NCBI RefSeq assembly: GCF_003704095.1
Contig: NW_020844212.1
Coordinates: forward strand, 1-64,000
Origin: Pocillopora damicornis
Taxonomy: Eukaryota
Length of the DNA: 64,000 nucleotides
Direction: 5' to 3'
The notes under the pieces are model-generated. The model had not been told where the DNA came from. It did not search any database and saw only the letters and a list, made by a program, of their open reading frames with translations. This document shows positions 13,401-46,595 of the stretch, piece after piece; the stretch's first letter is position 1; each line of letters opens with the position of its first letter. The position numbers and the translations under genes were made by a program.

Positions 13401-15044
13401 CTTTTATATAACTAACTATATAAACATTATACATAGCAATGTTGTCTCATAGATGATGTCTGTGTGGTCTTGTTTGATTTTTACCTTTCCCTTGCTCAAA
13501 AATATGAAATTGTGCCTAGGACAACATTACATTTTGGAGCACAGTGCTGTGATTTCTGACACAGTATATTTAAAGCGATTACTGATGGCAAAGGAATTAA
13601 TTGGTACTTCAATGAAGAATGTAGAGCACAGCAATCAATGTAAACCATCATAACAAAAAACATGGTGACTGGTACATTCACCTAGAACTCTCTGCACAAG
13701 AAAATCCTGGAACCACTCAAAAAATCAAGCAGAAAAGGTCTGGAAAATTTAAACTTTGCATATATAATGGTGTTGTTTTGTGAAATATTGCTTTCTACAT
13801 GTGCCTTACCCTAAAAATAATGGTAAAATGTACAGGCACCATCTTTGTCTGTAAGTGGATTGAATCTATTGGGTAAACACCTGAAAAAATAATAATATTG
13901 ATACAAATAAAATGAGGGTTTAGTATAGGTATGCTGTGGTTTAGTTTTATCCTTAGTTTAATTCTTTTACTTTTAATAGAAGCCAAATTGATAGTGACAT
14001 ATCATCTCACCATAACTTAGGAGCTAAATTTTATCTTTCTTTACACAAAATGCATTTTCATTCATACCATTAACAAAACTTTTATAACTAGCGCATAATT
14101 TTCCAAAAAAATGTTTACAATGGAGCTTATCACCTCATCAGAACTTTTGATGTGTAAAAAGTTTGTGAGTTAACTTTCCAGGATATGTGAACTTTGACAT
14201 CGACCATACATCCTAGCTGAATTTTTGTGTAGCCCTATACATTTACAATGATTACATGTCTTCCACTGTATCCATAATAGCCATCAGTGTAGACACTATG
14301 AGATTGCTACATGTAACAAAGTACAAATTATTGTGAGGCTGGAAGAAAGTCACAAGTTTTTGATCATTGAAACACCGACATCTGTCCTGTTTTTTAATCG
14401 TGTAATATCTGATTTTGCATGGCCCAAACAAAATAAAAAAGTCAGTCCTCGACACAGAAGGATTCAATGAATCCAGGTATCATGCAGCTACATGAAATCC
14501 ACAGGAATTTAACACAAAACTTAAACGCGATCTTTGAAGAATGGTTGTAATATTTAAATTTTAAAAAGATACTAGCATGAAATGCAACGAAAACCTTACC
14601 TTACTGAACTAGCTCCGACAGAAAAGTCAGGAAAACCACGACGCAATGTCAAATTCTCGTCTTCCTAAGCTTTCTAATATATGGAAGAAAATTTCCCTAA
14701 TACCTCGCACTTAAAAAAGCTACCAGAATCTTACTCTTTCACCGATCAGAAGCGTCCCAAAAGGCATCAAGGACAGCCCATGAAACAAGGATAGCCCATG
14801 AAGTTCTCAAGCTCTTAACGATCTTTCTACACTTTTGCATTGCATCCCTCCCCTAGTTGGAAAGTGACACACGGAAGACGCGACTACAGTTAACGCACTT
14901 TGATTGGAAGAAGTAAAACCGCATTCTATTGGTTATAAGATGTGAGGACATCGCTACAAAGGAAGACACAACCGCCATGCTATATTTCTTCATTACTTCT
15001 TCAATAACAATTTTGCTTTTGTCGCCGCCCGAGTAAAGTTGAAG

Positions 15045-18000
15045 ATGGCCTCCGCAAAGGATGAAAATTGCATAAGTCCATATAGGAGACTTCTCCTAGA
15101 AATGTCGATGGAACTGTCTAACAAAGATCTGGAGCGGTTGATGTATGCTGTAGGGGATCGTCTTCCCAGGAGATTGACAGAAAACATAGAAAGCGGACTG
15201 AAGTTATTTGAAGCACTCGAACAAGATGTACACATTGGTCCACAGAATCTGACTTTGCTACATGATGGGTTTAAAGCGATCGGCAGAGTGGATCTTGCGC
15301 AAAGCATTCAGGTTTTTTCAAGAAAACTCCACAAAGCTGATGATGATCCGGATGAGACTGACGGTAATTCTGTATAGGGTGTATCTTGTAGAGACAAAAA
15401 ATATTACTCAATCGTTGTCGCATCGGTCGCAAACGTCAGTCTTTAGATCCGAGTTTCTTAGAAAAAAAAAAAACAAATAAGTGTTTTGATGCAAATCTGG
15501 AAACTGACTCGAATTGCTTTATTTAATATTTACAAACAACAGGAATATCTGAATAAAAAATATCCTTTACCCGTAAAATTATTTTAATACTTAAAAGTTC
15601 GATCTGAATTCGACAACGCGGTAATCAAGTTGCAACATAAACATCTTAGAATACTTCGCCTTACAGAGCTCTGCACACCTCGCTTTTTAATTCCCAAACC
15701 TAAATTTTTTAAGCCATAAATTACCACTACTAAAATATTAAGAAAGTGAGTTCAGGTAAAATTATTTAGACACAGGAAATTTTTTTATATTTGTTATGAT
15801 TTTGTCTTAACTAGATGGGCAAGGTGACATGGTTCCTGACGGGGTAGGGGACGGTAGTGATCCGGAACCAAAAGGAAGTGATTTTCCTGACAATGGTGCC
15901 CGAAAAGGTACAGATACGAATAAACTTAGTGAACTGGTTCATTCTGAGTATCGCTCCATAATAAAGAACTTTTTTTCTAATCTTATTTTAAGTTTTAACC
16001 CAACAATTTTTTCCAGTGGAAACCTTAAAACCTGGCGATTTGAGCTTTTAATTAATCCAAGTTCTTCCCCCTCTCCCTCCCACCCAACTCGGCCCTAGAT
16101 AAGGAAAAAAGGAATCACGTGGGGTATAACATCATGCTAGCAACGTATCAAGAAAAGCGGATCGGCCTAAAGTTGAGCAGGCTTTGTTTAATGAATAGGG
16201 CCTTTTCTTCCAACTCAGCAGCTGCAGCTGACGAACATGTCATGACATTTCGATCTGTAGTTGATCAGCCACATCCTGCGAATCCTAGAAATACTTCAAC
16301 AGGGTTAAGTGGCGGTGATGCGGATGGCCGTACAGCTGAACATCTTGTTGCTGTCAGAAGTGATGCTTCGCTAACTGTTACAAATAATGGTGAGAACCTG
16401 AAAAGGGAAGGAAATTAATACTTTAAATACTTTAGGAATGTGGACAACAAGTGAACTACTTATAAAACTTTATGCGTCACTGTTGCTTTGTGAACGTTTA
16501 AATATATGCTTTGGGCAGTTTAACTGATCTCTGGGTAGCAAATTAATTGAAGCAGTTTCCAATTGAGTGTCAAGACTAACCCGAGATTTCTTTGCTTTTG
16601 CTTATCTTCGCTTAGTGATTGGTCAAGAAATCTCGAACCACTTTCTGAAACAATCATGCAGATTCGAAACTAAAACCGATTCTCGCGTTTGAGGCAGTTT
16701 CTCTTTTTCACTAGGAGTTTTCACTGGCTATTTCTGATGATTTCCTTTGTTCTGATTGGCTGTTGTCATCAATGTGGTTTGTGTGTGAAATCTCTTTCCT
16801 TCTTTAAATTTCAGGCTCCTCTTTAGAATCTGCGCGGGGACCCTGTCCTGCACCTTCTCGGGATTTCGTCCTTGAATCGTCTGCTCGACTCCAGCCTGAT
16901 CCAGCTGCAGGACCTGCACCTGCTCGATACGTGAACTTTCTGGTTCACGAGGGCTACGTCGTGGAAATCCTGGGAGGAAAACACTATAAGACCCCTGATG
17001 GAGAATTTGTAGAGATGAAGAGTGGGACGCAATATAAAATACACGTCAAAAATTCTCATGCTTATGGTAAAAGTCATACATATTACTGTTTCAAAAACAC
17101 TTTTCAACTTTGTCACCATGTCAAATTGGGGTGAAAACACACTGTTAAGTTTCAATGGACTCCTCTTACTGACTGCGCTACCACGTTCTTTTTGACAAGA
17201 ACTTCACCCCTACCCTGATGAACGGACCTGCACCGGTCCCCATCCAGAAAATCATAACCAGGGTGACTCTTTATTTTCGCTGGTGCATGGGGAACACCTC
17301 ACTGCACTTCATTTGCTTAGAGGTCAAGAGACGTTATAAGCGTCTACCAATTATACAATTTCTTTCTCACTTTTCATTGAGTCCCTTTCGTTTCTTTTTG
17401 CATGGAAGACTGAATTCGTCAATACTCTATGATGAAGATCTCGATTTTATACATATAAGATCATTGACCACTTGCGCCTTTTTTCCAGGTTGCCATGTCG
17501 ACATATCTATTGATGGTTATGACGTAGGGGGATGGGCTCTCCGCGGTGGAGAAGAGATGTCAATAGAAAGACCAGCTTATGAGGCCAAGAAGTTCACCTT
17601 CTACCGAGTGAAAACTGCACCGAAAGAGGCAGGAATTGAATCTGGCCGGCCCGAAAATGGAGTTGTTAAGTGCGTGTTCACACCTGAAGCTTTTCTTAAC
17701 ATTCCAGTGATCACCTCTGACTCGTCTCAGCCTTTGAATGTGAGCATGCCTCCATCGGCGACAGTTGGTGAGTTGAAACGTAAATTGCAGCACCAGATGG
17801 GAGTTATGGATGACCCCTATCAAGTTCTGGCTAAAAGCGACAAGGTCCTATCAAATGGTACACGACTACGGTAAGAAATATAAAGCCTACAAGCCTATAG
17901 GATGATCCTTTGGATGGCGGACTAGTAAGGGATAAAATCTTGTCAATTTTCTCTTTTTTCCATCAGAGATATAATTGAGAAACCCATGGATTTGAGACTA

Positions 18001-18153
18001 ATAGATGCAGAAATATCAATTACAGTAACAGCCGAGGCGTGTTCCAATTGTCCTTTTCCAATAAAGGTGCATCCCGGCAAGGTAAAGGTCCATTATCTCA
18101 TGGAACAGATAGAAGGGAAGATTCAAGTCCCAATCAGGGATCAAAAGCTTTAC
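15045..18153 (+). CDS. DED-domain / beta-domain / multi-ubiquitin-like protein, paralog 1, 5' part
   Basis: GT-AG exons in one continuous frame: 15045-15363 (DED with DLE..L and GRVDL = RxDL motif), 15815-15907, 16219-16389, 16815-17066, 17489-17870 (beta domain ..ISIDGYDVGGW..IERP..KKFTF..NGVVKCVFTPE then UBL1 ..ATVGELKRKL..) and 17967-gap 18153 (UBL2 ..IEGKIQVPIRDQKLY). Confidence 0.85.
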
Positions 18154-18347
18154 NNNNNNNNNNNNNNNNNNNNNNNNNNNNNNNNNNNNNNNNNNNNNNN
18201 NNNNNNNNNNNNNNNNNNNNNNNNNNNNNNNNNNNNNNNNNNNNNNNNNNNNNGTTATGCGACCAGATATTCCCGTTCTTTCCGTCGTTTGGCCTGAGTT
18301 CAGAAAGACTATAACGTTATTTGTCATTGGTTGTGATCTTTAACAGG

Positions 18348-19829
18348 TTGTCATTTGGACATATCTATTGATGGTTACGATATTGGTGGATGGGCTCTCC
18401 ACGGAGGAGAGGAGATGTCAATCGAAAGATCAGCTTATGAGGNNNNNNNNNNNNNNNNNNNNNNNNNNNNNNNNNNNNNNNNNNNNNNNNNNNNNNNNNN
18501 NNNNNNNNNNNNNNNNNNNNNNNNNNNNNNNNNNNNNNNNNNNNNNNNNNNNNNNNNNNNNNNNNNNNNNNNNNNNNNNNNNNNNNNNNNNNNNNNNNNN
18601 NNNNNNNNNNNNNNNNNNNNNNNNNNNNNNNNNNNNNNNNNNNNNNNNNNNNNNNNNNNNNNNNNNNNNNNNNNNNNNNNNNNNNNNNNNNNNNNNNNNN
18701 NNNNNNNNNNNNNNNNNNNNNNNNNNNNNNNNNNNNNNNNNNNNNNNNNNNNNNNNNNNNNNNNNNNNNNNNNNNNNNNNNNNNNNNNNNNNNNNNNNNN
18801 NNNNNNNNNNNNNNNNNNNNNNNNNNNNNNNNNNNNNNNNNNNNNNNNNNNNNNNNNNNNNNNNNNNNNNNNNNNNNNNNNNNNNNNNNNNNNNNNNNNN
18901 NNNNNNNNNNNNNNNNNNNNNNNNNNNNNNNNNNNNNNNNNNNNNNNNNNNNNNNNNNNNNNNNNNNACCAAGGGAGTGCCTCCCTGATAAACTCATCTG
19001 CAGTCCACGACCGGCTGTAGCCGTCATCCTCCCGGAGTATATTCACATAACTGTGGAAGAACAGAATGGTGACTCGCATGCCTTGAAGATAGACAAAGAG
19101 AAGAACTTGAAGGCTGTCATGGAAGAAATTCCTTCGTGTTGTAACCTGCAAGAAAATACACAGGTCATATTTTATTTCAATGAAAAAAAACTCTGTCCTT
19201 TTAAAAATAAAGGGAACTTAGACAACCTGGGTATTTGTTCTGGATCAAGGCTCGAGTNNNNNNNNNNNNNNNNNNNNNNNNNNNNNNNNNNNNNNNNNNN
19301 NNNNNNNNNNNNNNNNNNNNNNNNNNNNNNNNNNNNNNNNNNNNNNNNNNNNNNNNNNNNNNNNNNNNNNNNNNNNNNNNNNNNNNNNNNNNNNNNNNNN
19401 NNNNNNNNNNNNNNNNNNNNNNNNNNNNNNNNNNNNNNNNNNNNNNNNNNNNNNNNNNNNNNNNNNNNNNNNNNNNNNNNNNNNNNNNNNNNNNNNNNNN
19501 NNNNNNNNNNNNNNNNNNNNNNNNNNNNNNNNNNNNNNNNNNNNNNNNNNNNNNNNNNNNNNNNNNNNNNNNNNNNNNNNNNNNNNNNNNNNNNNNNNNN
19601 NNNNTTGTTTAAGGTGCCGTCGCACGGGATGGAAGTATGCTTCTATTTTGACAATTTTATCTTGTGAATTGATGGAGCCAACGATAGAAATATCTGTCGA
19701 ATGCCTTTTCTTTGTATTAGATTACGGAGTTACGCACGGCTGTACCCTTCACGTGACGAAACATCTGGCCGCTGATGGTTCCATCATTCCTCACGAAACG
19801 TCTAAGTGTAACGGGCAAGAGTTCGAAAG
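18348..19829 (+). CDS. Gap-separated exon fragments of a second DED/UBL paralog
   Basis: 18348-18442 GCHLDISIDGYDIGGWALHGGEEMSIERSAYE duplicates the 17489 exon. 18968-19257 PRECLPDKLICS..IHITVEEQNGDSHALKIDKEKNL..LGICSGSRLE is UBL2/3. 19721-19829 DYGVTHGCTLHVT is the UBL4 end, with the same phase-1 entry and phase-2 exit as 38539-38623. Confidence 0.75.
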
Positions 19830-37687: not shown

Positions 37688-37974
37688 CTGTAGGGCAGTA
37701 AATTATTCCACTTATTTTAATAAATGCTAGGACTTTACAGAATAAATCCATTGATTGAAAAACACCTATAAGTGCTCCTTTACAAGGAAGCAACAAATTA
37801 AGGGATTGTAAAAGACACAAACTCTAACAGAACTGCAGGTAATGATAGTGTAATCTCTGTATCAGTCTGAGATANNNNNNNNNNNNNNNNNNNNNNNNNN
37901 NNNNNNNNNNNNNNNNNNNNNNNNNNNNNNNNNNNNNNNNNNNNNNNNNNNNNNNNNNNNNNNNNNNNNNNNNN

Positions 37975-39635
37975 GAAGATCAGAGTGGCCACTCACACTC
38001 CGTGAAAGTGGACAAAGAAAAGAACTTAAAGGCGGTCATAGAAGAAATTACCTTGTGTTGTAACCTGCAGGAAAACGAAGAGGCTACGTTTACTTTCAAT
38101 GGAAAGCACCTCTGCCCTTCTAAAGACAAAGGAACCTTATCAAGCCTTGGTATTTGCTCTGGATCGAAGCTTGAGTTGACAGTGAGGATTCTTTACATCG
38201 AAGTCAAAGTTTTCTTCTCCGATAACTCTTCATCAGCCAGTGTGAAGTGTGATCCCCAAGAAACATTCCGGGATTTGGTTACAAAGGTCTTAAAACGGCG
38301 CAACAGAAGAAAGTGCAGGGTTACATTTGTAATAGATGGACGAGAGTTTGATCCGAATCAAGACAAGGGTCCGTTACAAGGTATATTTTATTCCTCAAAG
38401 TTAATCTATCACTAATAATAACAGTGTTACTAAATGGCTGCGGCGTAGGGTGAAAGAAAGATACTATTTCGGCAACTTCACCCTATATGATAGTGTAACA
38501 AGCAAGATAATATATTCGGTTAACTTTCTCTGATCTAGATTACGGAGTTGCGCATGGCTGTACGCTTCGGGTGACGAGTCATCCCACTTCGGTCGGTGCT
38601 AGGCATAGGATCATACTCGACGGGTAAGTGTATAAAATATGGCTGACTGAGTGCATAGAAATGCAAATATCCTGATACTTCGTAAACTTTTTAGCCGCCA
38701 TAGACAAGAACAAAGACGTACATTTAGAACGCGAGGTGACTTTATTTTGCGAGGACTCAGATTCCTTTTAGCATCTAATTTACAATTGGCGTTCATTGAC
38801 CTCGACGTGGTCGAACTGGCTTCTTTAATCCCTAAGTAATTTGTTAAGGTGGTGAGAAAGAGGACAAATGACGATTTAGACTACAAAAGGTTTTCATTCA
38901 AAAACCACTGAGAAAAGCGGACCTACTAAAATCTCAGCGTTGTAAAGCTAAAACAGGCAATTTGTTAAACTATAAACCTTGATTAGGTTTAGAGCGCGTG
39001 CGTGAATTTCTGTCCGAGATAACTTTAATAAGCTTGGATACAACGTAGTAATATTTGCCTTGTCTATTTCTCTTTCAAATAGGCCTCAGGTGTTAGGAGC
39101 TCCAGGTAAGCAAAGCACCAATGGGAATGGGTGGAGAAGGTGTAAAAAATCAGGAAATGAACACTTATGCTGCAATCCCTATTCAATTGCTATCCGTCAA
39201 GCAAATCTTAAGAATTAGCATTTGGAGACGTCTTTTTCAGGGTACAGAATTTTAGTGATGAATAGTAGGGGGAGGGGAGTGTAGAGTACGTAAGGATTTG
39301 GAAAACAATGACGAGTCTTGGTTTTGCGAGATTCGTCCTAATTTCAAACATAAACTTTTTGTCGCTGGGTTTTGCCGACCACCTAACTCCACAATAGACA
39401 CTTAAAAGGCAACCACGAAGTCCCTTCAACTCGTCAGCAAAGCAACCTTCGACCAGCTTTTGGCCTGTTGGGACGTTAGTCTCCCTACCATCAACTGGAA
39501 AACCTGTACTTTCATCAACAATGACTCCATCTGCAGCTATTTTACAAAACTAGTGCGAGACAATTACTTGGGGCAACTGGTTGATTCCCGTACACGGAAT
39601 ACCATCATGTTGGATCTGGCCCTCACTAATGCCCC

Positions 39636-39666
<31 letters not shown>

Positions 39667-42600
39667 TTGTTTTGTTAAACACAGTTTAATTTTTTTTTCT
39701 TCATAGAAACTATTTAACCGAATATTTTTGACTTGAATGTAGCACATTGGAAATGCAAGTTAGCAAGTACTTGAATCCAATGGAAAATCAAGTTTTTCAG
39801 TTCTCTGTTTATAATTTTCATTCAATGAAAACCAGTTTAACAAAACATGTTTTGCTGGTGTGAATGGGGTATAAGACAATACCGCTCGCGTATAGCTCTA
39901 AAGAACTAATTTTTAGCAAATTTCAAGTAAATCTCTATTACTCGTGTATTTTACAGGAAAAGGACAATTCTTGGCTCACTGTGGAAATGGTGAGAAATTA
40001 TCCTTTTCTTAAGTGAAGTTTTTTGCTACAAATATTTCGTAACTTGCATGACGAAGCATTTTTTCTATTTTCACTTTTTGTTTTAATTTGCCATTATGAA
40101 GAGGATACTTTGGGGGAGTTTTTTTTATCTTAAAAGATCAGGGGGTAGGGGGCAGGGGGTAGCTGTCAACTGGGACTTTGTTCTGTTACTGCCCCCGTCA
40201 CGAAATCCTTTTTTGTTCACCTCGCCTTTTATACAAAACTAACAAGTTCTAGTCGCTTATTTTAATGGTGTCGTGTTGCAGTTTGGTTGCCTGTTACGAC
40301 TACGTCTTGTTCTGACTCATATGCAAATTTTTTAGGCGTAACCGGAGTAGCCTCTTGTTTTATTATTTGTCAAATCATCGATCGATGTTCTCCAAATTGC
40401 TCGAAAAAGGAAAGGGAAAAATGAAATGCAAGATGCATGTAGTTCAAGTATGTTTAAGACTCGCCGGCGCGTATAATTAGGTATGGGGAGCCGTTTGTCC
40501 CAAATATTAATCACTCAACCGTCCATTTTAAGATACACGCATTTGAGTTCTAAATAACTTATCTCGAGTAAATTTCTCTTTTAGTATCTATGGTAGCAGG
40601 GTCACACTCTGGAGATGGTGAGTAATTTTCCTTTCCTATAAGTTTAATTTTTTTGCTATTGATAAGATACATGAAAAAATTACTCAGTTCTGATTGGTTA
40701 AGATAAATTTAGTTTTCAGGTAATTCAGTGCAGAAGAGGGTTAATTCAGTGCTCAGACACTTTTTTTAATTTGCCATTATGAGGAGGATCATGTGGGGGA
40801 GTTAAAGATCGGGAGGGGGGGCAGGGGGCAGCTGTTAATTGGGCTTTGTCTTATTACTGCCCCCTGTCACGAACTTATTTTTTATGGATCTGTAAATTTC
40901 GTAACGAATAAATTAAATTAGACGAATGCTAAAGTTTTTCATACATCAAACTCTGGTTACAAGGAGAAGTTTATTCATTAAACTGCCTGATCAGCTTTCC
41001 CTTTTCTCATTTTTTTTAACATTGAGAGCTCTCGTTTTGGTTATGTAAACGGTCCATTTATACTAGATAATTACGCCAGTTCTTTGAGTGCTCACTTCAC
41101 TTTTACACTGCACCACAGCCTCTTACATGTTTAAGTAGGATAAACTGAAAAAATAACTTTCCAACTTGTTAAGTCAACCGTCAATTTAAAGAGACACGCA
41201 ACTAAGCTCTAAAGAACTAATTTCTAGCAAATTTCAAGTACATCTCTATTACTCGTGTATTTTACAGAAAAAAGACAATTCTGGGGTCACTGTAGAAAAG
41301 GTGAGCAATTACCCTTAAGTGAAGTTTTTTGCTACAAATATTTCGTAACTTGCATGAAGAAGCATTTTTCTATTTTCACTTTTTGTTTTGATTTGCCATT
41401 ATGAGGAGGATAGTTTGAGGGAGTTTTTTTTATCTTAAAAGATCAGGGGGTAGGGGGCAGGGGGTAGCTGTCAACTGGGACTTTGTTCTGTTACTGCCCC
41501 CGTCACGAAATTCTTTTTTATTCACCTCGCCTTTTATACAAAACTAACAAGTTCTAGTCGCTTATTTTAATGGTGTTGCAGTTTGGTTGCCTGTTACGAC
41601 TACGTCTTGTTCTGACTCATATGCAAATTTTTTAGGCGTAACCGGAGTAGCCTCTTGTTTTATTATTTGTCAAATCATCGATCGATGTTCACCAAATTGC
41701 TCGAAAAAGGAAATACAATGTCTAAGACTTGCCAGCGCGTATAATTAGGTATGGGGAGCATTTGTGCCAAAGATATCAATCATTAGTGATAAAACTCAAT
41801 CGTTAGTGCTAAAACATCAATCGTAGCGATAAAACTCAATCATTAGTGCTAGTATTGATTTGTTATCGATTTTACTTTGAGCTAGTCTCTCGCTTGTTAA
41901 GCAAAGGTGAACCAATCAAATCCTGCTCACTTTCATGAAATCTGATAAGGGACACTGAAATGAGAATAAAGGTAAAGACTACGAAGACTCATCAACTCTT
42001 TTTTTTCACGACTTCAACCTTTTTAAAAATTGAATTAAGTTGGAGTGCCAAAGTTTTCCATACGTCAAACTCTGATTTCAAGGAAAGTTTTGTTCATGAA
42101 ATTACTCGATCAGCTTTCATTTATCTCATTTTTCTTTTAACATTGAAAGCTCTCTCTTTTGTTAGGTAAACGGTTCACTATAGAGAATTACACTAGTTCC
42201 CTGAGTGCTCACTTCCTTTTTGCACCGCACCACAGTCTCTAACATGTTTAGATAGAATAATCTCACAAAAAATAGCTTGCTTGCTTGTCAAGTCAACCAC
42301 CCATTTTAGGAGACTCGTAGTTGAGCTCTAAAGAACTAATTTCCAGTAAATTTCAAGTACCTCTGTATTACTCTTGTAATTTATAGATGATGAGCTAACC
42401 TTTGGTACTTTGAGATGGAGAGAGTAACTTCCTTTTTTTTTAACTTAAGTCTTTTACTACAAATATTTCGTAGCTTGCATGACGATACAATTCATCTAGT
42501 TTAAGAGACTCGTCAAACTCTTGCCAAAAACAGCTAAAATTAAGGGTTTCTCGAGCAATTTTTGTTTTGATTTGCCATTATCAGGAGGATAATAATAATT

Positions 42601-45600
42601 TGTTATCTTAAAAGATTTGGGGGGCAGGGGGGCAGGGGGTAACTGTCAATTGGGACTGTCCTGTTACTGCCCCCCGTCACGAACTTTTTTTTTTTGTATC
42701 TGTACATTTTTGTAACGAATAAATTAAATTAGGGTATCAAAGTGTTATACACCTTAGTTTCCGTGCAACTGGTGAGTAATTTTCCCTTTTTCTGTTTTAA
42801 GTTTTGTGCTATAAATATTTGGTAGCTTGCATTACTCGGTGTTTTGTCTAATTTAAGAGACCCGTCATACTCCTCCTAAAGAAAGCTAAAATCAGGAGTG
42901 TTTCTCTTTTTACTTTGATTTGCCATGATGAGGAAGATCATGATGTAAGGGAGTTTAAGATCGGGGGGGGGGGGCCAGGGGCAGAGGCAGCTGTCAATTG
43001 TGACTTTGTCCTATTACTGCCCCCTGTCACGAACTTCTTTTTTATGTATCTGTACATTTTGTAACGAATAAATTAAATTCAATCAGGGTACCCAAAATTT
43101 CAATCCGTTGGTTCCTCTGCAAGCGGTGAGTAATTTTCCTCTTTTCTAGTTTAAGTTTTTCGCTAAAAATATAAATATTTCGTAGATGTACATTTTTGTA
43201 ACGAATAAATTAAATTCAAGTGGAGCGCCAAAGTTTTCCATACGTCAAATTTTGATTTTAAGGAAAATTTCATTCATGAAACTACTCGATCTCATTTTTT
43301 TTAACATTGAGAGCTATCGCTTATGTTACGTTAACGGTTCATTAAAAGAGAATTACACTAGTTCCCTGAGTGCTCACTTTACTTTCACGCCGCACCACAG
43401 CCTCTTACATGTTTAAGTGGCATAATCTAAAAAACTAGCTTGCTTACTGTCGATTGGGACTTTGCCCTATTACTGCCCCTAGTCACATACTGCTTTTTTT
43501 ATGTATCTGTATATTTTTGTTACGAATAATTAAATTAAATTAGAGGAATGCTTAAGTTTTCCATGCATCAAATTCTACTTACAAGGAAGATTTTGACTGT
43601 AAATATATGAAAATCATATATGTGCACTGGGGTTGAAGAAACGAAAATAGAAGCAATCCTCGCAGATATGAATATACTACTGAACTAGTAGTGAAATTCA
43701 TTAAACTACTCGATCAGCTTTTCTTCTTCTCATTTTTTTTTTTTAACAATGAGAGCTCTCGCCTTTGTTACGTAGACGGTTATTAATAGAGAATTATACT
43801 AGTTCCCCGAGTGCTCACTTCACTTTTACACCGCACCACAGCCTCTTACATGTTTAAGTAGGATAATCTTAAAAAGTAATTTCTAATGAATTTTAAGTAC
43901 CTCTCTATTACTCTTGTAATTTACAGAAGAGGATCTATCCTGTGGTTTCTCTGGAATTTGTGAGTAATTTTCTTGCTTGCATTGCAAAGCAATTTGTCTA
44001 GTTTTAGAGACTCGTCAGGCCCCTTCCCAAAAAGCAGGGGCTGAAAAAGCTAAAATGAAGGGTGTTCCTCAGAACCTTTTTTTTCGTATTTGTCATTGTG
44101 ATGAGGATCATGTGGAGGAGCTTTGGATCAGCCATTCTCGATCAGATACATACAGTATATGAATTTGATTTCTGTTTGACTTGAAGAATTTAGGCAGGGA
44201 TGCGAGATTCTAGGTGCATATGATTCGTATCTCAAAGATACGTTTCGTTTCTCGATGTTTCTTTCTCTGATACATATGGGATACTTTAGCTTTCGAATGC
44301 CAGATAATCGCTTGATAATCAGATAACTTCCATCAAGTATTTCAACTTTTCAATTTCCCCTCTCATTCTCTAACGTCATACGGTACAATTAACCAAAACC
44401 TCTTTACTTACTGAACTTCCCTGTGCAAAAAGGAAGAACATTATTTCCTGTCACCGAAATGTGTCCCTTATAGAAGCAGACAAATCAAAATAAACAGATC
44501 TCCCCTTTTCTATTTCACTGCTATGTCTACAGAAAGAATTCATTTATGACTGAGAAATAAGGCCTCAGAGGAAGAGGAGGAATGAGAGAGTCGGACGCGA
44601 TTACTACGCGTACCATCCCATGTTGGAAACTTTTCAATTTAAAATATGCGTGAATAAGTCATTCTTCAGTTTACTGAATTTAAGTAGACTGTTTCTCTCG
44701 ATTATTTTGCATTCGAATTTCCCACCTCGATGATACTGTGTGCGATATTTCCCGGCTATGATTCTGAATTATATCATCTTGCTAATGCATCGATCAATTC
44801 CAAGCTTCAAAATCTCCCTTCAGGGAACCCAATTGGCCCACCCACGGACCAGATTTAACGGTCAATTTTTATGCAAAAGACAAAATCAGGGTCGTGACTT
44901 TCTACTCATTGACCAAGCTTTAAAACTTGTAAACCTTGTAGACCTTTTCTTCTGAGCTGTTCGTCAGTGAAAGTGAACTTTACCTATTAAAAGATAAAAC
45001 GCGTGTATTCCTTTGGAAAGACTTGACACTTCCTTCTCCACCCTAGCTGGGAAAGGTTCAAATACCCCAACCCCTGGGCAAAGAAAACAGTCAAATACCC
45101 GTGGGTTTTTCCTGGTAAAGTGGTTGAAATTTAGAGTTGGTCGGCACATAACCAAGTGTAAGGCCGTACTTGGGATTATTGGCCCGGGGTCTTCGGTGTG
45201 GGTTGGCAGTATGGACTGAGCGCAGGGAGGTCTGTATTTTAACAACCGAAGGCCAATATTTCCCTTACGTCAAGAGCAAGCGAGGTTAGTAGGCAGTTTA
45301 TCTCATGGCACTCAGACCAAGCTTGTTTATTTTATTTTTACTAGCTTTCAAAAAACGCACAGCTTATGACCGTTTCTGTGGTGGAAACGGACCTCAGGGC
45401 AAAATCCCAATCAAATAAGAAAACTAGTCTGAACGCTTAGATCTACCCCAGGACTACCTTGCCATATAAATGCAATAATAATACAATCGTAAATATGTCC
45501 TAGAATATTTGTATATCTGCCGTCAATGCCCTTTTCCTATTACATGTAAAGTTCACGGTTGTGCCAATGTCGTTGAACCGGATCCAGCATGGAGATCAGG

Positions 45601-46127
45601 TGGAACAACATTACAAGGCCACAGTACACAACAGTTTACCAAGGCTGAACCAATAAGAGTGGATCATTCACGGAGGGTGGAACTGGTAATCAGGCTTGTA
45701 GCCAGGTAATACACCACTTAGCACATTAAAAAAGGGACGGGTCAGTTATTTGTTTTGGAATAGTTAGTCCTTCGTACCTGGCTCGACGATTAGCCGTTGT
45801 TATGGAAATGAGCCGTGTATTATCTCCTAGGTACGACTTGAGAGAGTAGCGGTATTCGACCTAAATGTCTCTCGTTATTACAAGGATGTTTAAACAAGAG
45901 CTTTTCTAAAGTAACCCCGAGCTGTCACGAGCTAGGTACAAAATTGTTTAGGGAAAATTTTAACACAGTCATTTACGACCAAGGAAAACCGGTTTCTCCA
46001 ACACCGAGGGCGAGTTGTAGATGTTAGTTCTTTGTTGTTAATATTCTTGTATGTCTCTCTACTTTTTAGAGATGGAGAAAAAGATCTAGAATTTCCCAAA
46101 GGTGAATGTAAACCGCTGTCAACTCTG
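37975..46127 (+). CDS. 3' part of a DED/multi-UBL gene: UBL3, UBL4, microexon array, C-half of the beta domain
   Basis: Exons gap-37975-38380 (UBL3 and UBL4), 38539-38623 (DYGVAHGCTLRV), 39083-39105, microexons 39957-39989, 40585-40617, 41268-41300, 42733-42771, 43087-43125 and 43927-43959, then 45552-45705 (WRSGGTTLQGHSTQQF..VELVIRLVAR) and 46070-gap (DGEKDLEFPKGECKPLSTL). Phases chain consistently with no stops. Confidence 0.8.
39170..39629 (+). mobile_element. Degenerate LINE (CR1/L2-like) AP-endonuclease fragment
   Basis: Frameshifted RGGGV, RPPNS, WDVSLPTINW (GDFNLP.INW-like), QLVDSRTR and LDLALTNAP motifs. Confidence 0.65.
39630..39871. mobile_element. PIF/Harbinger-type MITE
   Basis: TIRs TGCCCCATTCACACCA / TGGTGTGAATGGGGTA with TAA on both sides. 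Confidence 0.7.
39885..44120 (+). repeat. Tandemly duplicated intron-microexon-intron modules
   Basis: ~39895-40420 is nearly identical to ~41205-41720. Shared blocks recur 3-7 times: gctctaaagaactaattt..ctctattactcgtgtattttacag, gtgagtaatttt, tttgccattatgaggaggat, the G-rich/C-rich hairpin and gagtgctcactt..gcaccacagcctcttacatgttta. Confidence 0.9.
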
Positions 46128-46595
46128 ANNNNNNNNNNNNNNNNNNNNNNNNNNNNNNNNNNNNNNNNNNNNNNNNNNNNNNNNNNNNNNNNNNNNNNNN
46201 NNNNNNNNNNNNNNNNNNNNNNNNNNNNAATTTTCACAAAGGCCAAAGTTTGATACATTTTGACATGACCTAGGACCCAGGAACACTGGGTATATCAGCT
46301 ACAGGTTCAGTGGTAAAATTCCAGGGAGAATATGGTGTGTATTGAGAATAGCATTTAATTCAAAACCATATTTCCAGAAGTCTCCACCAACAGTTACACT
46401 ATATCATTGCAAATATTGCGCGAAACAAACACATGTGCATTGTACCCAAGATGTACTTATCATATATTTAAATAATATAATGAGTTGCATTATACTTGCA
46501 TTTAGGTTTTGTTATTATCTAAGACCTATTAGCAGACAGATGCTTTCATGTTGTCACCATTAACAACATTTTGCTTTGTTTTCACTTAAGAGATA

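What the first reader, a model, noticed from the sequence alone, without database searches (positions are those of the whole stretch)
39957..43959. Tandem array of frame-preserving 33/39-nt microexons inside a DED/ubiquitin-like gene
Seen: six AG..GTGAG-bounded exons of exactly 33 or 39 nt, all phase 1 in and out and all stop-free in the inherited frame. They are 39957-39989 GKGQFLAHCGN, 40585-40617 VSMVAGSHSGD, 41268-41300 EKRQFWGHCRK, 42733-42771 GYQSVIHLSFRAT, 43087-43125 GYPKFQSVGSSAS and 43927-43959 EEDLSCGFSGI. The 23-nt exon 39083-39105 sets phase 1 on entry and exon 45552 accepts phase 1. The exons sit in duplicated intron modules, and the ORF track misses them entirely. Inference: any subset can be skipped without a frameshift, giving up to 64 linker variants. 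This resembles schistosome micro-exon genes or Dscam-type diversification, but in a death-fold protein of a cnidarian-like genome.
Basis: partly seen in the sequence, partly recalled or inferred. Interest (0 to 1): 0.9.

Follow-up and report, generated by a model that had tools for sequence, protein, structure and literature searches.

The report
Tandem micro-exon array, coral orphan gene
A stony coral (Pocillopora damicornis) carries a row of duplicated 33- and 39-base exons that all keep the reading frame. Public gene models in two Pocillopora species already splice several of them into a small, fast-evolving protein encoded next to a death-domain gene, but nothing shows that they are shuffled into many variants.

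Summary
All are phase 1-1 and open in the stated frame. First-order shuffles of the intron give 0.37 such segments, against 6 observed.

They are locus-specific tandem duplicates of one exon-plus-intron unit. A seventh unit (42387-42419) has a dead donor. Homologous units lie at the same place in P. cf. effusa and in Stylophora pistillata (two units, 30 and 24 nt). Every unit with intact splice sites is a multiple of three long.

GenBank's P. damicornis protein pdam_00010303 starts at an ATG inside exon 40585, then uses exon 41268 and the exon at 45552. So several units are very probably real coding exons.

Both annotations place them in a separate small orphan gene (88-120 aa) just downstream of the DED/ubiquitin-like gene, not inside it. 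A fused isoform stays frame-compatible.

The encoded stretch evolves almost neutrally and is predicted to be disordered. Units are gained and lost between species.

Combinatorial splicing into 64 variants has no support.

The parts
37976..38380 (+). Ubiquitin-like coding exon of the upstream DED/Ubl gene. It begins inside the N gap 37875-37974, and its donor leaves phase 1.
   Evidence: Pfam Rad60-SLD 2e-8 and ubiquitin 5e-5. Sequence and donor read. 92% identical to the P. cf. effusa DED-Ubl gene.
38539..38623 (+). 85-nt exon that completes the last Ubl domain (..DYGVAHGCTLRV..). Phase 1 in, phase 2 out. If unspliced, an in-frame TAA follows at 38625-38627.
   Evidence: Read. The same Ubl-exon splice is seen in a metatranscriptome contig of another coral. 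Conserved twice in P. cf. effusa.
39083..39105 (+). 23-nt candidate exon (phase 2 in, phase 1 out). No transcript or gene model seen here supports it.
   Evidence: AG and GTAAG read. Conserved with its splice sites in P. cf. effusa copy 2. Its 3' end and donor are conserved in S. pistillata.
39957..39989 (+). Micro-exon unit e1, 33 nt, phase 1-1. Splice sites intact, but it is in no annotated CDS.
40585..40617 (+). Micro-exon e2, 33 nt. ATG 40590-40592 is the start codon of GenBank pdam_00010303 and of the P. cf. effusa model.
   Evidence: Nearest to the S. pistillata unit at L021 14212-14235.
41268..41300 (+). Micro-exon e3, 33 nt. It is a coding exon in both Pocillopora gene models.
42387..42419 (+). 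Seventh unit, 33 nt. The donor is mutated to GAGAG in this genome. Its orthologue has GTGAG and is a coding exon in the P. cf. effusa model.
42733..42771 (+). 39-nt unit e4 with an A-rich, weak acceptor. In no gene model. Its donor is damaged by a 2-nt deletion in P. cf. effusa.
43087..43125 (+). 39-nt unit e5 with a weak acceptor. In no gene model. No counterpart found in the P. cf. effusa locus; present with intact sites in a Tara Pocillopora scaffold.
43927..43959 (+). Micro-exon e6, 33 nt. Its orthologue is a coding exon in the P. cf. effusa model. The P. damicornis model skips it.
45552..45707 (+). First conserved tail exon (DPxWRxGGTTLQGHSTQQF..ELVLRLVAR), phase 1 in and phase 2 out. The P. 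damicornis model uses an alternative acceptor at 45503|45504, in the same frame. That AG is not conserved in P. cf. effusa.
   Evidence: 34 coral homologues. Paralogues on contig C2136. S. pistillata homologue at L021 15026-15167. Acceptors compared.
46070..46128 (+). Start of the last coding exon (DGEKDLEFPKGECKPLSTL..). It runs into the N gap 46129-46228, which I did not fill.
40216..40481 (.). Dispersed repeat inserted into the e1 unit. A second copy at about 41516-41780 was carried along when the unit duplicated.
   Evidence: Matches at about 80% identity on at least 10 other contigs. The two local copies are 97-99% identical.
40644..40752 (.). Abundant short interspersed element of about 100 nt in the intron after e2.
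   Evidence: 90-96% identical copies on at least 25 contigs.

Best explanation
The segments are real, tandemly duplicated, phase-1-symmetric micro-exon units of an array found only at this locus in pocilloporid corals. The array grew by repeated duplication of one exon together with its downstream intron. Transposon insertions and deletions then remodelled it.

They encode the N-terminal 20-45 residues of a small orphan protein of about 90-120 aa. Two downstream exons (45552-45707 and 46070 onward) encode its strongly conserved C-terminal part.

In Pocillopora this is most likely a separate transcription unit directly downstream of the DED/ubiquitin-like gene, with its start codon inside e2. 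Because every unit is 3n and phase 1-1, gain, loss or skipping of a unit never breaks the frame. Units therefore turn over freely, and the encoded segment drifts as a low-constraint, probably disordered tail.

Shown here: anatomy, homology of the units, conservation across species, and agreement with public gene models. Inferred: that those models rest on transcripts, and the separate-gene status. Not shown: any alternative splicing.
For: - Coordinates, splice sites and frames.
- 6 observed against 0.37 expected.
- The units are homologous to each other.
- The exon plus its flanks is unique to this locus in the 234-Mb genome.
- The syntenic S. pistillata locus keeps two units with intact AG/GTGAGTA, 30 and 24 nt long.
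- All lengths seen (24, 30, 33, 39) are multiples of three, although they arose by about four independent indel or acceptor-shift events. My estimate of the chance of that is about 1 in 80.
- GenBank pdam_00010303 (100% identical to the window) is made of e2 from ATG 40590, e3 and the tail exon. The P. 'meandrina' 120-aa protein is made of e2, e3, the 42387-type unit, e6 and both tail exons. I checked both exon by exon.
- That second annotation was built by Gmove purely from aligned proteins and the species' own RNA-seq contigs, with no ab initio step (PMC10236652). Two of its micro-exons occur in no other protein among my search hits, so they most likely come from transcripts.
- The tail exon is a conserved family exon, with 34 homologues and 18 invariant columns.
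- Paralogue transcripts (Logan contigs) encode stand-alone small ORFs behind stop-rich leaders with no DED or Ubl.
- Orthologous exon differences are 7 non-synonymous to 3 synonymous. Exon divergence is 4.1% against 2.6% for the whole aligned block.
- AlphaFold gives pLDDT below 50 for most of the first 49 residues, the micro-exon-coded part.
Against:
- The P. damicornis model came from MAKER and could be partly ab initio. It uses an acceptor (45503|45504) that is not conserved in P. cf. effusa.
- That GCA_942486045.1 is the Genoscope assembly described in PMC10236652 is my inference. The accession is not in the paper's text.
- Phase continuity from the Ubl exons through the 23-nt exon into the array holds in all three species. 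In S. pistillata there is no in-frame ATG in the micro-exons or tail exon 1, and the first one upstream lies in the exon fused to the Ubl exon. That fits a fused gene better in that species.
- Exons e1, e4 and e5 have no model support at all.
Confidence: 0.62

Rival explanations
1. The array lies inside the DED/ubiquitin-like gene as a linker between the last Ubl domain and a C-terminal tail. Its exons are cassette exons, skipped in many combinations to diversify a death-fold adaptor.
For: - The chain 38380 > 38539-38623 > 39083-39105 > micro-exons > 45552 is phase-compatible and free of stops.
- A 930-bp deletion in S. pistillata fuses the Ubl exon to the end of the 23-nt exon and still exits in phase 1. 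The S. pistillata GenBank model joins the DED-Ubl exons to the last tail exon.
- DED genes and tail genes are duplicated together as neighbours.
- The two Pocillopora models differ in which units they include.
Against: - Two independent annotations start the small gene at an ATG in e2 and end the DED-Ubl gene upstream.
- The 85-nt exon runs into TAA when unspliced, in P. damicornis and in both P. cf. effusa copies.
- Paralogue transcripts carry no DED or Ubl upstream.
- The S. pistillata model skips the conserved tail exon 1 and uses exons in a lineage-specific insertion, so it is unreliable.
- No data show any skipping within one species.
Confidence: 0.2
2. The units are unexpressed pseudo-exons: decaying duplicates that keep splice-like signals only by descent. 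The public models that include them are annotation artefacts.
For: - I saw no RNA.
- Sequence constraint is near-neutral (7 non-synonymous to 3 synonymous changes).
- Donors have been lost in single lineages: 42387 here and the 42733 orthologue in P. cf. effusa.
- The 39-nt units have weak, A-rich acceptors.
- Three exons are open in every frame.
Against: - The evidence-only Gmove model contains four 33-nt exons in a row.
- All eight splice-competent units, across two genera and four different lengths, are multiples of three.
- At e2 the ancestral AG was lost and replaced by a new acceptor 12 nt upstream, while the length stayed 33 nt.
- Donors keep the extended GTGAGnAA consensus in 6 of 7 units here and in both S. 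pistillata units.
Confidence: 0.1
3. Dscam-type mutually exclusive array: exactly one unit enters each mRNA, chosen through competing intron RNA structures.
For: The array consists of duplicated alternative-looking exons. Each unit's intron carries a conserved hairpin of about 75 nt made of a G-rich and a C-rich arm.
Against: Both public models include two to four units in series. Mutually exclusive exons do not need to be 3n, yet all of these are. Part of the hairpin element also occurs as dispersed partial copies elsewhere in the genome.
Confidence: 0.03

Closest known systems
Tandem exon duplication that builds arrays of short symmetric exons included in series (titin PEVK, collagen and other repeat-protein exon arrays). 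Another agent described a mini-exon stalk in this same genome (s1-775443).
   Same: The exons are homologous to each other and were duplicated together with their flanking intron. All share one phase and are 3n long. Several are included in series. Copy number differs between related species. The product is probably disordered.
   Different: The exons here are only 24-39 nt and number just 2-7. They show almost no peptide repeat conservation, only a loose G-x-H-S/C core. They sit at the N-terminus of a protein of about 100 aa, not in a long structural protein. The start codon lies inside one of the micro-exons.
Schistosome micro-exon genes (MEGs)
   Same: A run of symmetric 3n micro-exons of 36 nt or less lies between longer exons. 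The encoded sequence evolves fast. The gene is an orphan restricted to one lineage.
   Different: There is no signal-peptide-like N-terminus. The micro-exons make up only about a third of the CDS. Here they are obvious recent duplicates of each other. Exon skipping has not been shown. There is no sequence homology to MEGs.
Dscam / protocadherin-type variable exon clusters
   Same: A tandem cluster of duplicated exons lies upstream of constant exons.
   Different: Units are included in series, not one at a time. There is no evidence of regulated choice. The encoded piece is a short disordered segment, not a folded half-domain.
Coral DED + ubiquitin-like proteins (S. pistillata PFX11866.1; Montipora capricornis XP_068721503.1)
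   Same: These proteins represent the family of the upstream neighbour gene, and of the possible fusion partner in Stylophora. The synteny DEAH helicase / DED-Ubl / tail exons / RPL14 is shared.
   Different: In Pocillopora annotations the micro-exon and tail ORF is a separate gene. More distant corals have the DED-Ubl gene, but I could detect no array or tail exon downstream of it.

Membership tests
Tandem symmetric exon-duplication array | The exons are homologous to one another and were duplicated together with flanking intron sequence. | tested here: met
   Repeat families and multiple alignments of seven window units plus two S. pistillata units.
Tandem symmetric exon-duplication array | All exons share one phase class and are a multiple of 3 nt long. 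| tested here: met
   Lengths are 33, 33, 33, (33), 39, 39, 33 here, 30 and 24 in S. pistillata, and 33 for the intact-donor units in P. cf. effusa. All are phase 1-1.
Tandem symmetric exon-duplication array | Several units are present together in the mature mRNA. | tested here: inconclusive
   Two units (P. damicornis) and four units (P. cf. effusa) stand in series in public annotated proteins. I saw no reads myself.
Schistosome-type micro-exon gene (MEG) | Most of the CDS is built from symmetric micro-exons of 36 nt or less. | tested here: not met
   Micro-exons supply 21 of 88 codons in pdam_00010303 and 43 of 120 in the P. cf. effusa model.
Schistosome-type micro-exon gene (MEG) | An N-terminal signal peptide, i.e. 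a secreted product. | tested here: not met
   By direct reading, the first ~45 residues of P0034 and P0038 are hydrophilic with no hydrophobic core. I ran no dedicated predictor.
Schistosome-type micro-exon gene (MEG) | Transcript variants made by skipping micro-exons. | not testable with these tools
The only hint is that the models of two species differ.
Dscam-type mutually exclusive exon cluster | Exactly one exon of the cluster enters each mRNA. | tested here: not met
   Annotated models contain 2-4 units in series.
Dscam-type mutually exclusive exon cluster | Docking and selector intron pairings. | tested here: inconclusive
   Each unit carries its own internal hairpin (-24 to -34 kcal/mol, z -0.6 to -3.1). 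I did not examine pairing between units.
DED-domain protein | A DED domain in the same ORF as the micro-exons. | tested here: inconclusive
   A DED lies at window 15039-15374 (Pfam 3.9e-19) and in the orthologous upstream genes. The 5' part next to 37976 is hidden by an N gap, and the annotations keep the two ORFs apart.

The most novel reading that the evidence does not exclude
The array is a birth-and-death cassette system. Exon gain and loss between species, and exon skipping within a colony, would vary the N-terminal tail of a small protein. That protein is genetically coupled to a DED/ubiquitin-like death-fold adaptor, and in Stylophora it may be fused to it. This would be an innate-immune or cell-death diversification device in corals. 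The burst of exon substitutions right after unit duplication (6 of 33 against 3.8% in the flanks; 16 of 39 against about 10% in the near flanks) would then be its selective footprint.
Probability: 0.12. Interest if true: 0.7.

Novelty: new member of a known kind. Interest (0 to 1): 0.4.

Why it matters
The locus is a clean, small example of how symmetric micro-exons let a coding region grow, shrink and drift without breaking its frame. Copy number is 2 in Stylophora, 6-7 here, and different again in P. cf. effusa.

It also flags an unnamed, strongly conserved coral-specific small-protein family (motif DPxWRxGGTTLQGHSTQQF..LVLRLVAR) that repeatedly sits beside DED genes. This bears on coral cell-death and immune gene annotation, because current models split or fuse these genes inconsistently.

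It is not evidence for somatic or splicing-based diversification.

Tried and rejected
- Transposon origin of the units: rejected. The exon and its flanks match only this locus. Only the inserted pieces and a ~100-nt part of the intron module have copies elsewhere.
- snoRNA or other known RNA in the repeat units (the snoRNA-host-gene idea): no Rfam match at E<=1 over 37976-46128.
- JGI metagenome scan with the tail exon: two hits that I took to be spurious and did not examine further.
- More distant corals (loci L023, L024; transcript L022): the DED-Ubl gene is present, but I could detect no array or tail exon.
- Pfam and ESM Atlas on the small protein: nothing usable.
- AlphaFold on the public P. 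cf. effusa protein: mean pLDDT 54.8. This is too low for a fold search, so none was run.
- Exon-versus-intron divergence in recent duplicate pairs: suggestive (p=0.003 and p=0.03) but not robust. One other 33-nt window, next to an indel, is as diverged. The S. pistillata pair shows no such excess.
- Joined models: I did not build, search or fold any joined spliced model of my own. Public proteins were checked exon by exon.
- N gaps: not filled.
- Earlier scan notes near this place: none.
Full report
**Observation**

The six segments are exactly as described. Each has an AG acceptor and a GTGAG donor.

The phases work once the upstream exon is placed correctly. The Ubl exon ends at 38380 in phase 1. 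The next exon is 38539-38623 (85 nt, exits in phase 2). The 23-nt exon 39083-39105 exits in phase 1, and the exon at 45552 accepts phase 1. The split codons between any ordered subset contain no stop.

First-order shuffles of the 6.4-kb interval give 0.37 such segments on average, with a maximum of 3 in 500. Six are observed. Openness alone says little, because three of the exons are open in all three frames. It is 33 nt and open, but its donor reads GAGAG.

**What the units are**

All seven are copies of one ancestral exon plus its downstream intron. They share the 3' end of the exon, the donor GTGAGnAA and about 150 nt of intron. Five share an upstream module with a CTAAT branch-like site and a TTTACAG acceptor.

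The exon and its flanks occur nowhere else in the 234-Mb assembly. Only inserted elements have copies elsewhere: 40216-40481 with its duplicate near 41516-41780, an abundant ~100-nt element at 40644-40752, and a ~100-nt part of the intron module. The array is therefore a local tandem duplication, not a transposon.

**Organism and neighbours**

A GenBank protein, 'pdam_00010303 [Pocillopora damicornis]', is 100% identical to the window. On the + strand upstream lie Ubl exons (Pfam Rad60-SLD and ubiquitin). A DED exon lies at 15039-15374.

On the minus strand there is a DEAH-type helicase gene at about 32-37 kb. I identified it by reading its GETGSGKT and DEAH motifs; Pfam was blank on the short pieces. 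RPL14 lies at about 46.9-48.8 kb.

**Comparison with relatives**

*Stylophora pistillata.* Contig LSMT01001798.1 (locus L021) is syntenic. It keeps two homologous units, 30 and 24 nt, with intact acceptor and GTGAGTA donor. It also keeps the homologue of exon 45552, with a conserved acceptor, a 21-nt in-frame length difference and 5 synonymous against 7 non-synonymous changes. The last exon is present as well.

*P. 'meandrina'.* This is most likely the P. cf. effusa assembly of PMC10236652. Its gap-free locus L033 has orthologues of e1, e2, e3, the 42387 unit (donor intact there), e4 (donor damaged by a 2-nt deletion) and e6. It has one extra e6-like copy, and I found no counterpart of e5.

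*A Tara Pocillopora scaffold.* It has e5 and e6 with intact sites.

Every splice-competent unit in the three lineages is a multiple of three long: 24, 30, 33 or 39 nt. These lengths arose by at least four separate events. One of them is at e2, where the ancestral AG was lost and a new acceptor 12 nt upstream took over while the length stayed 33 nt. I put the chance of that at roughly 1 in 80. This argues that frame preservation has been under selection.

**Indirect evidence for splicing**

Two public gene models nevertheless contain the micro-exons.

- pdam_00010303 (88 aa) is made of e2 from ATG 40590, then e3, then the tail exon entered at 45504.
- The P. 'meandrina' protein (120 aa) is made of e2, e3, the 42387-type unit, e6, the tail exon entered at the 45552-type acceptor, and the last exon.

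I checked both exon by exon without joining anything myself.

The second annotation was made by Gmove from aligned proteins and the species' own RNA-seq contigs only, with no ab initio predictor (PMC10236652). Two of its micro-exons occur in no other protein among my search hits. A transcript alignment is therefore the likely source. This step is inference.

**Which gene do they belong to?**

Both annotations treat the array plus tail as a small gene of its own. In L033 the DED-Ubl gene (647 aa) ends upstream and the small gene begins at the ATG in e2. If the 85-nt exon is not spliced, it reads straight into TAA, both here and in both P. cf. effusa copies.

The tail exon belongs to a conserved coral family. 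It has 34 homologues and 18 invariant positions, with the motif DPxWRxGGTTLQGHSTQQF..LVLRLVAR. Two more copies lie on contig C2136 of this genome, one of them downstream of another DED gene.

Assembled transcripts of paralogues encode stand-alone ORFs of about 88-114 aa. Their leaders are rich in stops and contain no DED or Ubl. Pfam, the ESM Atlas and AlphaFold (mean pLDDT 54.8; below 50 for most of the micro-exon-coded residues 1-49) give no fold or family.

Against a clean separation, the frame runs unbroken from the Ubl exons through the 23-nt exon into the array in all three species. In S. pistillata a 930-bp deletion fuses the Ubl exon to the end of the 23-nt exon and still exits in phase 1. 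In that species the first in-frame ATG upstream of the tail lies in that fused exon. A fused gene is therefore plausible there, and a fused isoform cannot be excluded here.

**How the encoded sequence evolves**

Between P. damicornis and its close relatives the micro-exons differ at 7 non-synonymous and 3 synonymous sites. Exon divergence is 4.1% against 2.6% for the whole aligned block. That is close to neutral.

Between recently duplicated units the exon is more diverged than its flanks: 6 of 33 against 20 of 526 (p=0.003), and 16 of 39 against 61 of 246 (p=0.03). Four of the differences in the first pair predate the P. damicornis / P. cf. effusa split. This hints at a burst of change after duplication. 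The signal is not unique along the alignment, and the Stylophora pair does not show it.

Single units lose splice competence in single lineages. Taken together this looks like birth-and-death turnover of a weakly constrained, probably disordered N-terminal segment.

**Verdict**

The exons are very probably real, at least e2, e3 and e6. In this genome the 42387 unit is a dead copy. Units e1, e4 and e5 have no support.

Two parts have no support so far: placement inside that gene in Pocillopora, and the 64-variant diversification idea. Inclusion in series excludes a Dscam-type mechanism. The MEG analogy fails on secretion and on the share of the CDS.

The case is a new member of a known kind, tandem symmetric exon duplication. 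It has some extra interest because of the unnamed conserved small-protein family and its recurrent pairing with DED genes.

Noticed in passing
window 15039-19259 versus 37976; L033 1-4361; L021 1-10440: The DED and middle-domain exons at 15.0-18.15 kb are 92% identical to the P. cf. effusa segment that lies directly upstream of the Ubl exon matching window 37976. In S. pistillata the DEAH helicase gene abuts the DED exon. In this scaffold about 20 kb, containing the helicase gene and many N gaps, separates the two parts. Either the scaffold order is wrong here or there is a second, mosaic paralogue (its Ubl copy at 18981-19257 is only 78% identical).
   Followed up: partly
window 40128-40208, 40795-40876, 41430-41517, 42610-42686, 42955-43036; L021 12118-12196: Each unit's downstream intron carries a hairpin of about 75 nt, formed by a G-rich arm and a CUGCCCCC arm (-24 to -34 kcal/mol, z down to -3.1). 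S. pistillata has the same fold with GGGUAG/CUACCC in place of GGGCAG/CUGCCC. Part of the element also exists as a few dispersed copies (for example contig C2099). It could be a MITE remnant, a pre-miRNA-like hairpin or a splicing element.
   Followed up: partly
window 45552-45707 and 46070-46128; G000 contig C2136 about 180905-181054 and 197750-197893 (minus strand): An unnamed coral small-protein family with a near-invariant motif (DPxWRxGGTTLQGHSTQQF..ELVLRLVAR, then GExxLxFPxxxCxPLSTL). It has many genomic copies across scleractinians. Pfam and the ESM Atlas give no usable match and AlphaFold gives no confident fold. In this genome it sits downstream of DED genes at two loci (this window and C2136).
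   Followed up: partly
L021 10436-10449 versus window 38174-39105: Relative to Pocillopora, S. pistillata has a deletion of about 930 bp. It removes the last Ubl domain, the 85-nt exon and most of the 23-nt exon, yet keeps the donor and phase 1. The GenBank model PFX11866.1 then uses exons in a lineage-specific insertion and skips the conserved tail exon 1, so it is probably mis-annotated.
   Followed up: partly
L033 4913-8621: P. cf. effusa has an extra segmental duplication. A partial array (with an e6-like exon at 6628-6660) and a second copy of the 85-nt and 23-nt exons (7917-8034 and about 8472-8494) are inserted between the Ubl exons and the main array. The second 23-nt copy carries an in-frame ATG.
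   Followed up: no
window 39231-39660: A remnant of an endonuclease/reverse-transcriptase-type retroelement ORF (weak Pfam Exo_endo_phos_2 hit). It lies at the orthologous intron position in S. pistillata (L021 10798-11196) and in P. cf. effusa, so the insertion is old.
   Followed up: no
window 41759-41851: A 20/40-nt tandem repeat (about 3.7 copies) lies where the second copy of the duplicated super-unit has lost its counterpart of exon 40585.
   Followed up: no
window 40596-40600: Exon 40585 contains a tandem TAGCAG acceptor pair. Alternative starts at 40597 or 40600 would give 21- or 18-nt exons, again multiples of three, but both would remove the ATG.
   Followed up: no
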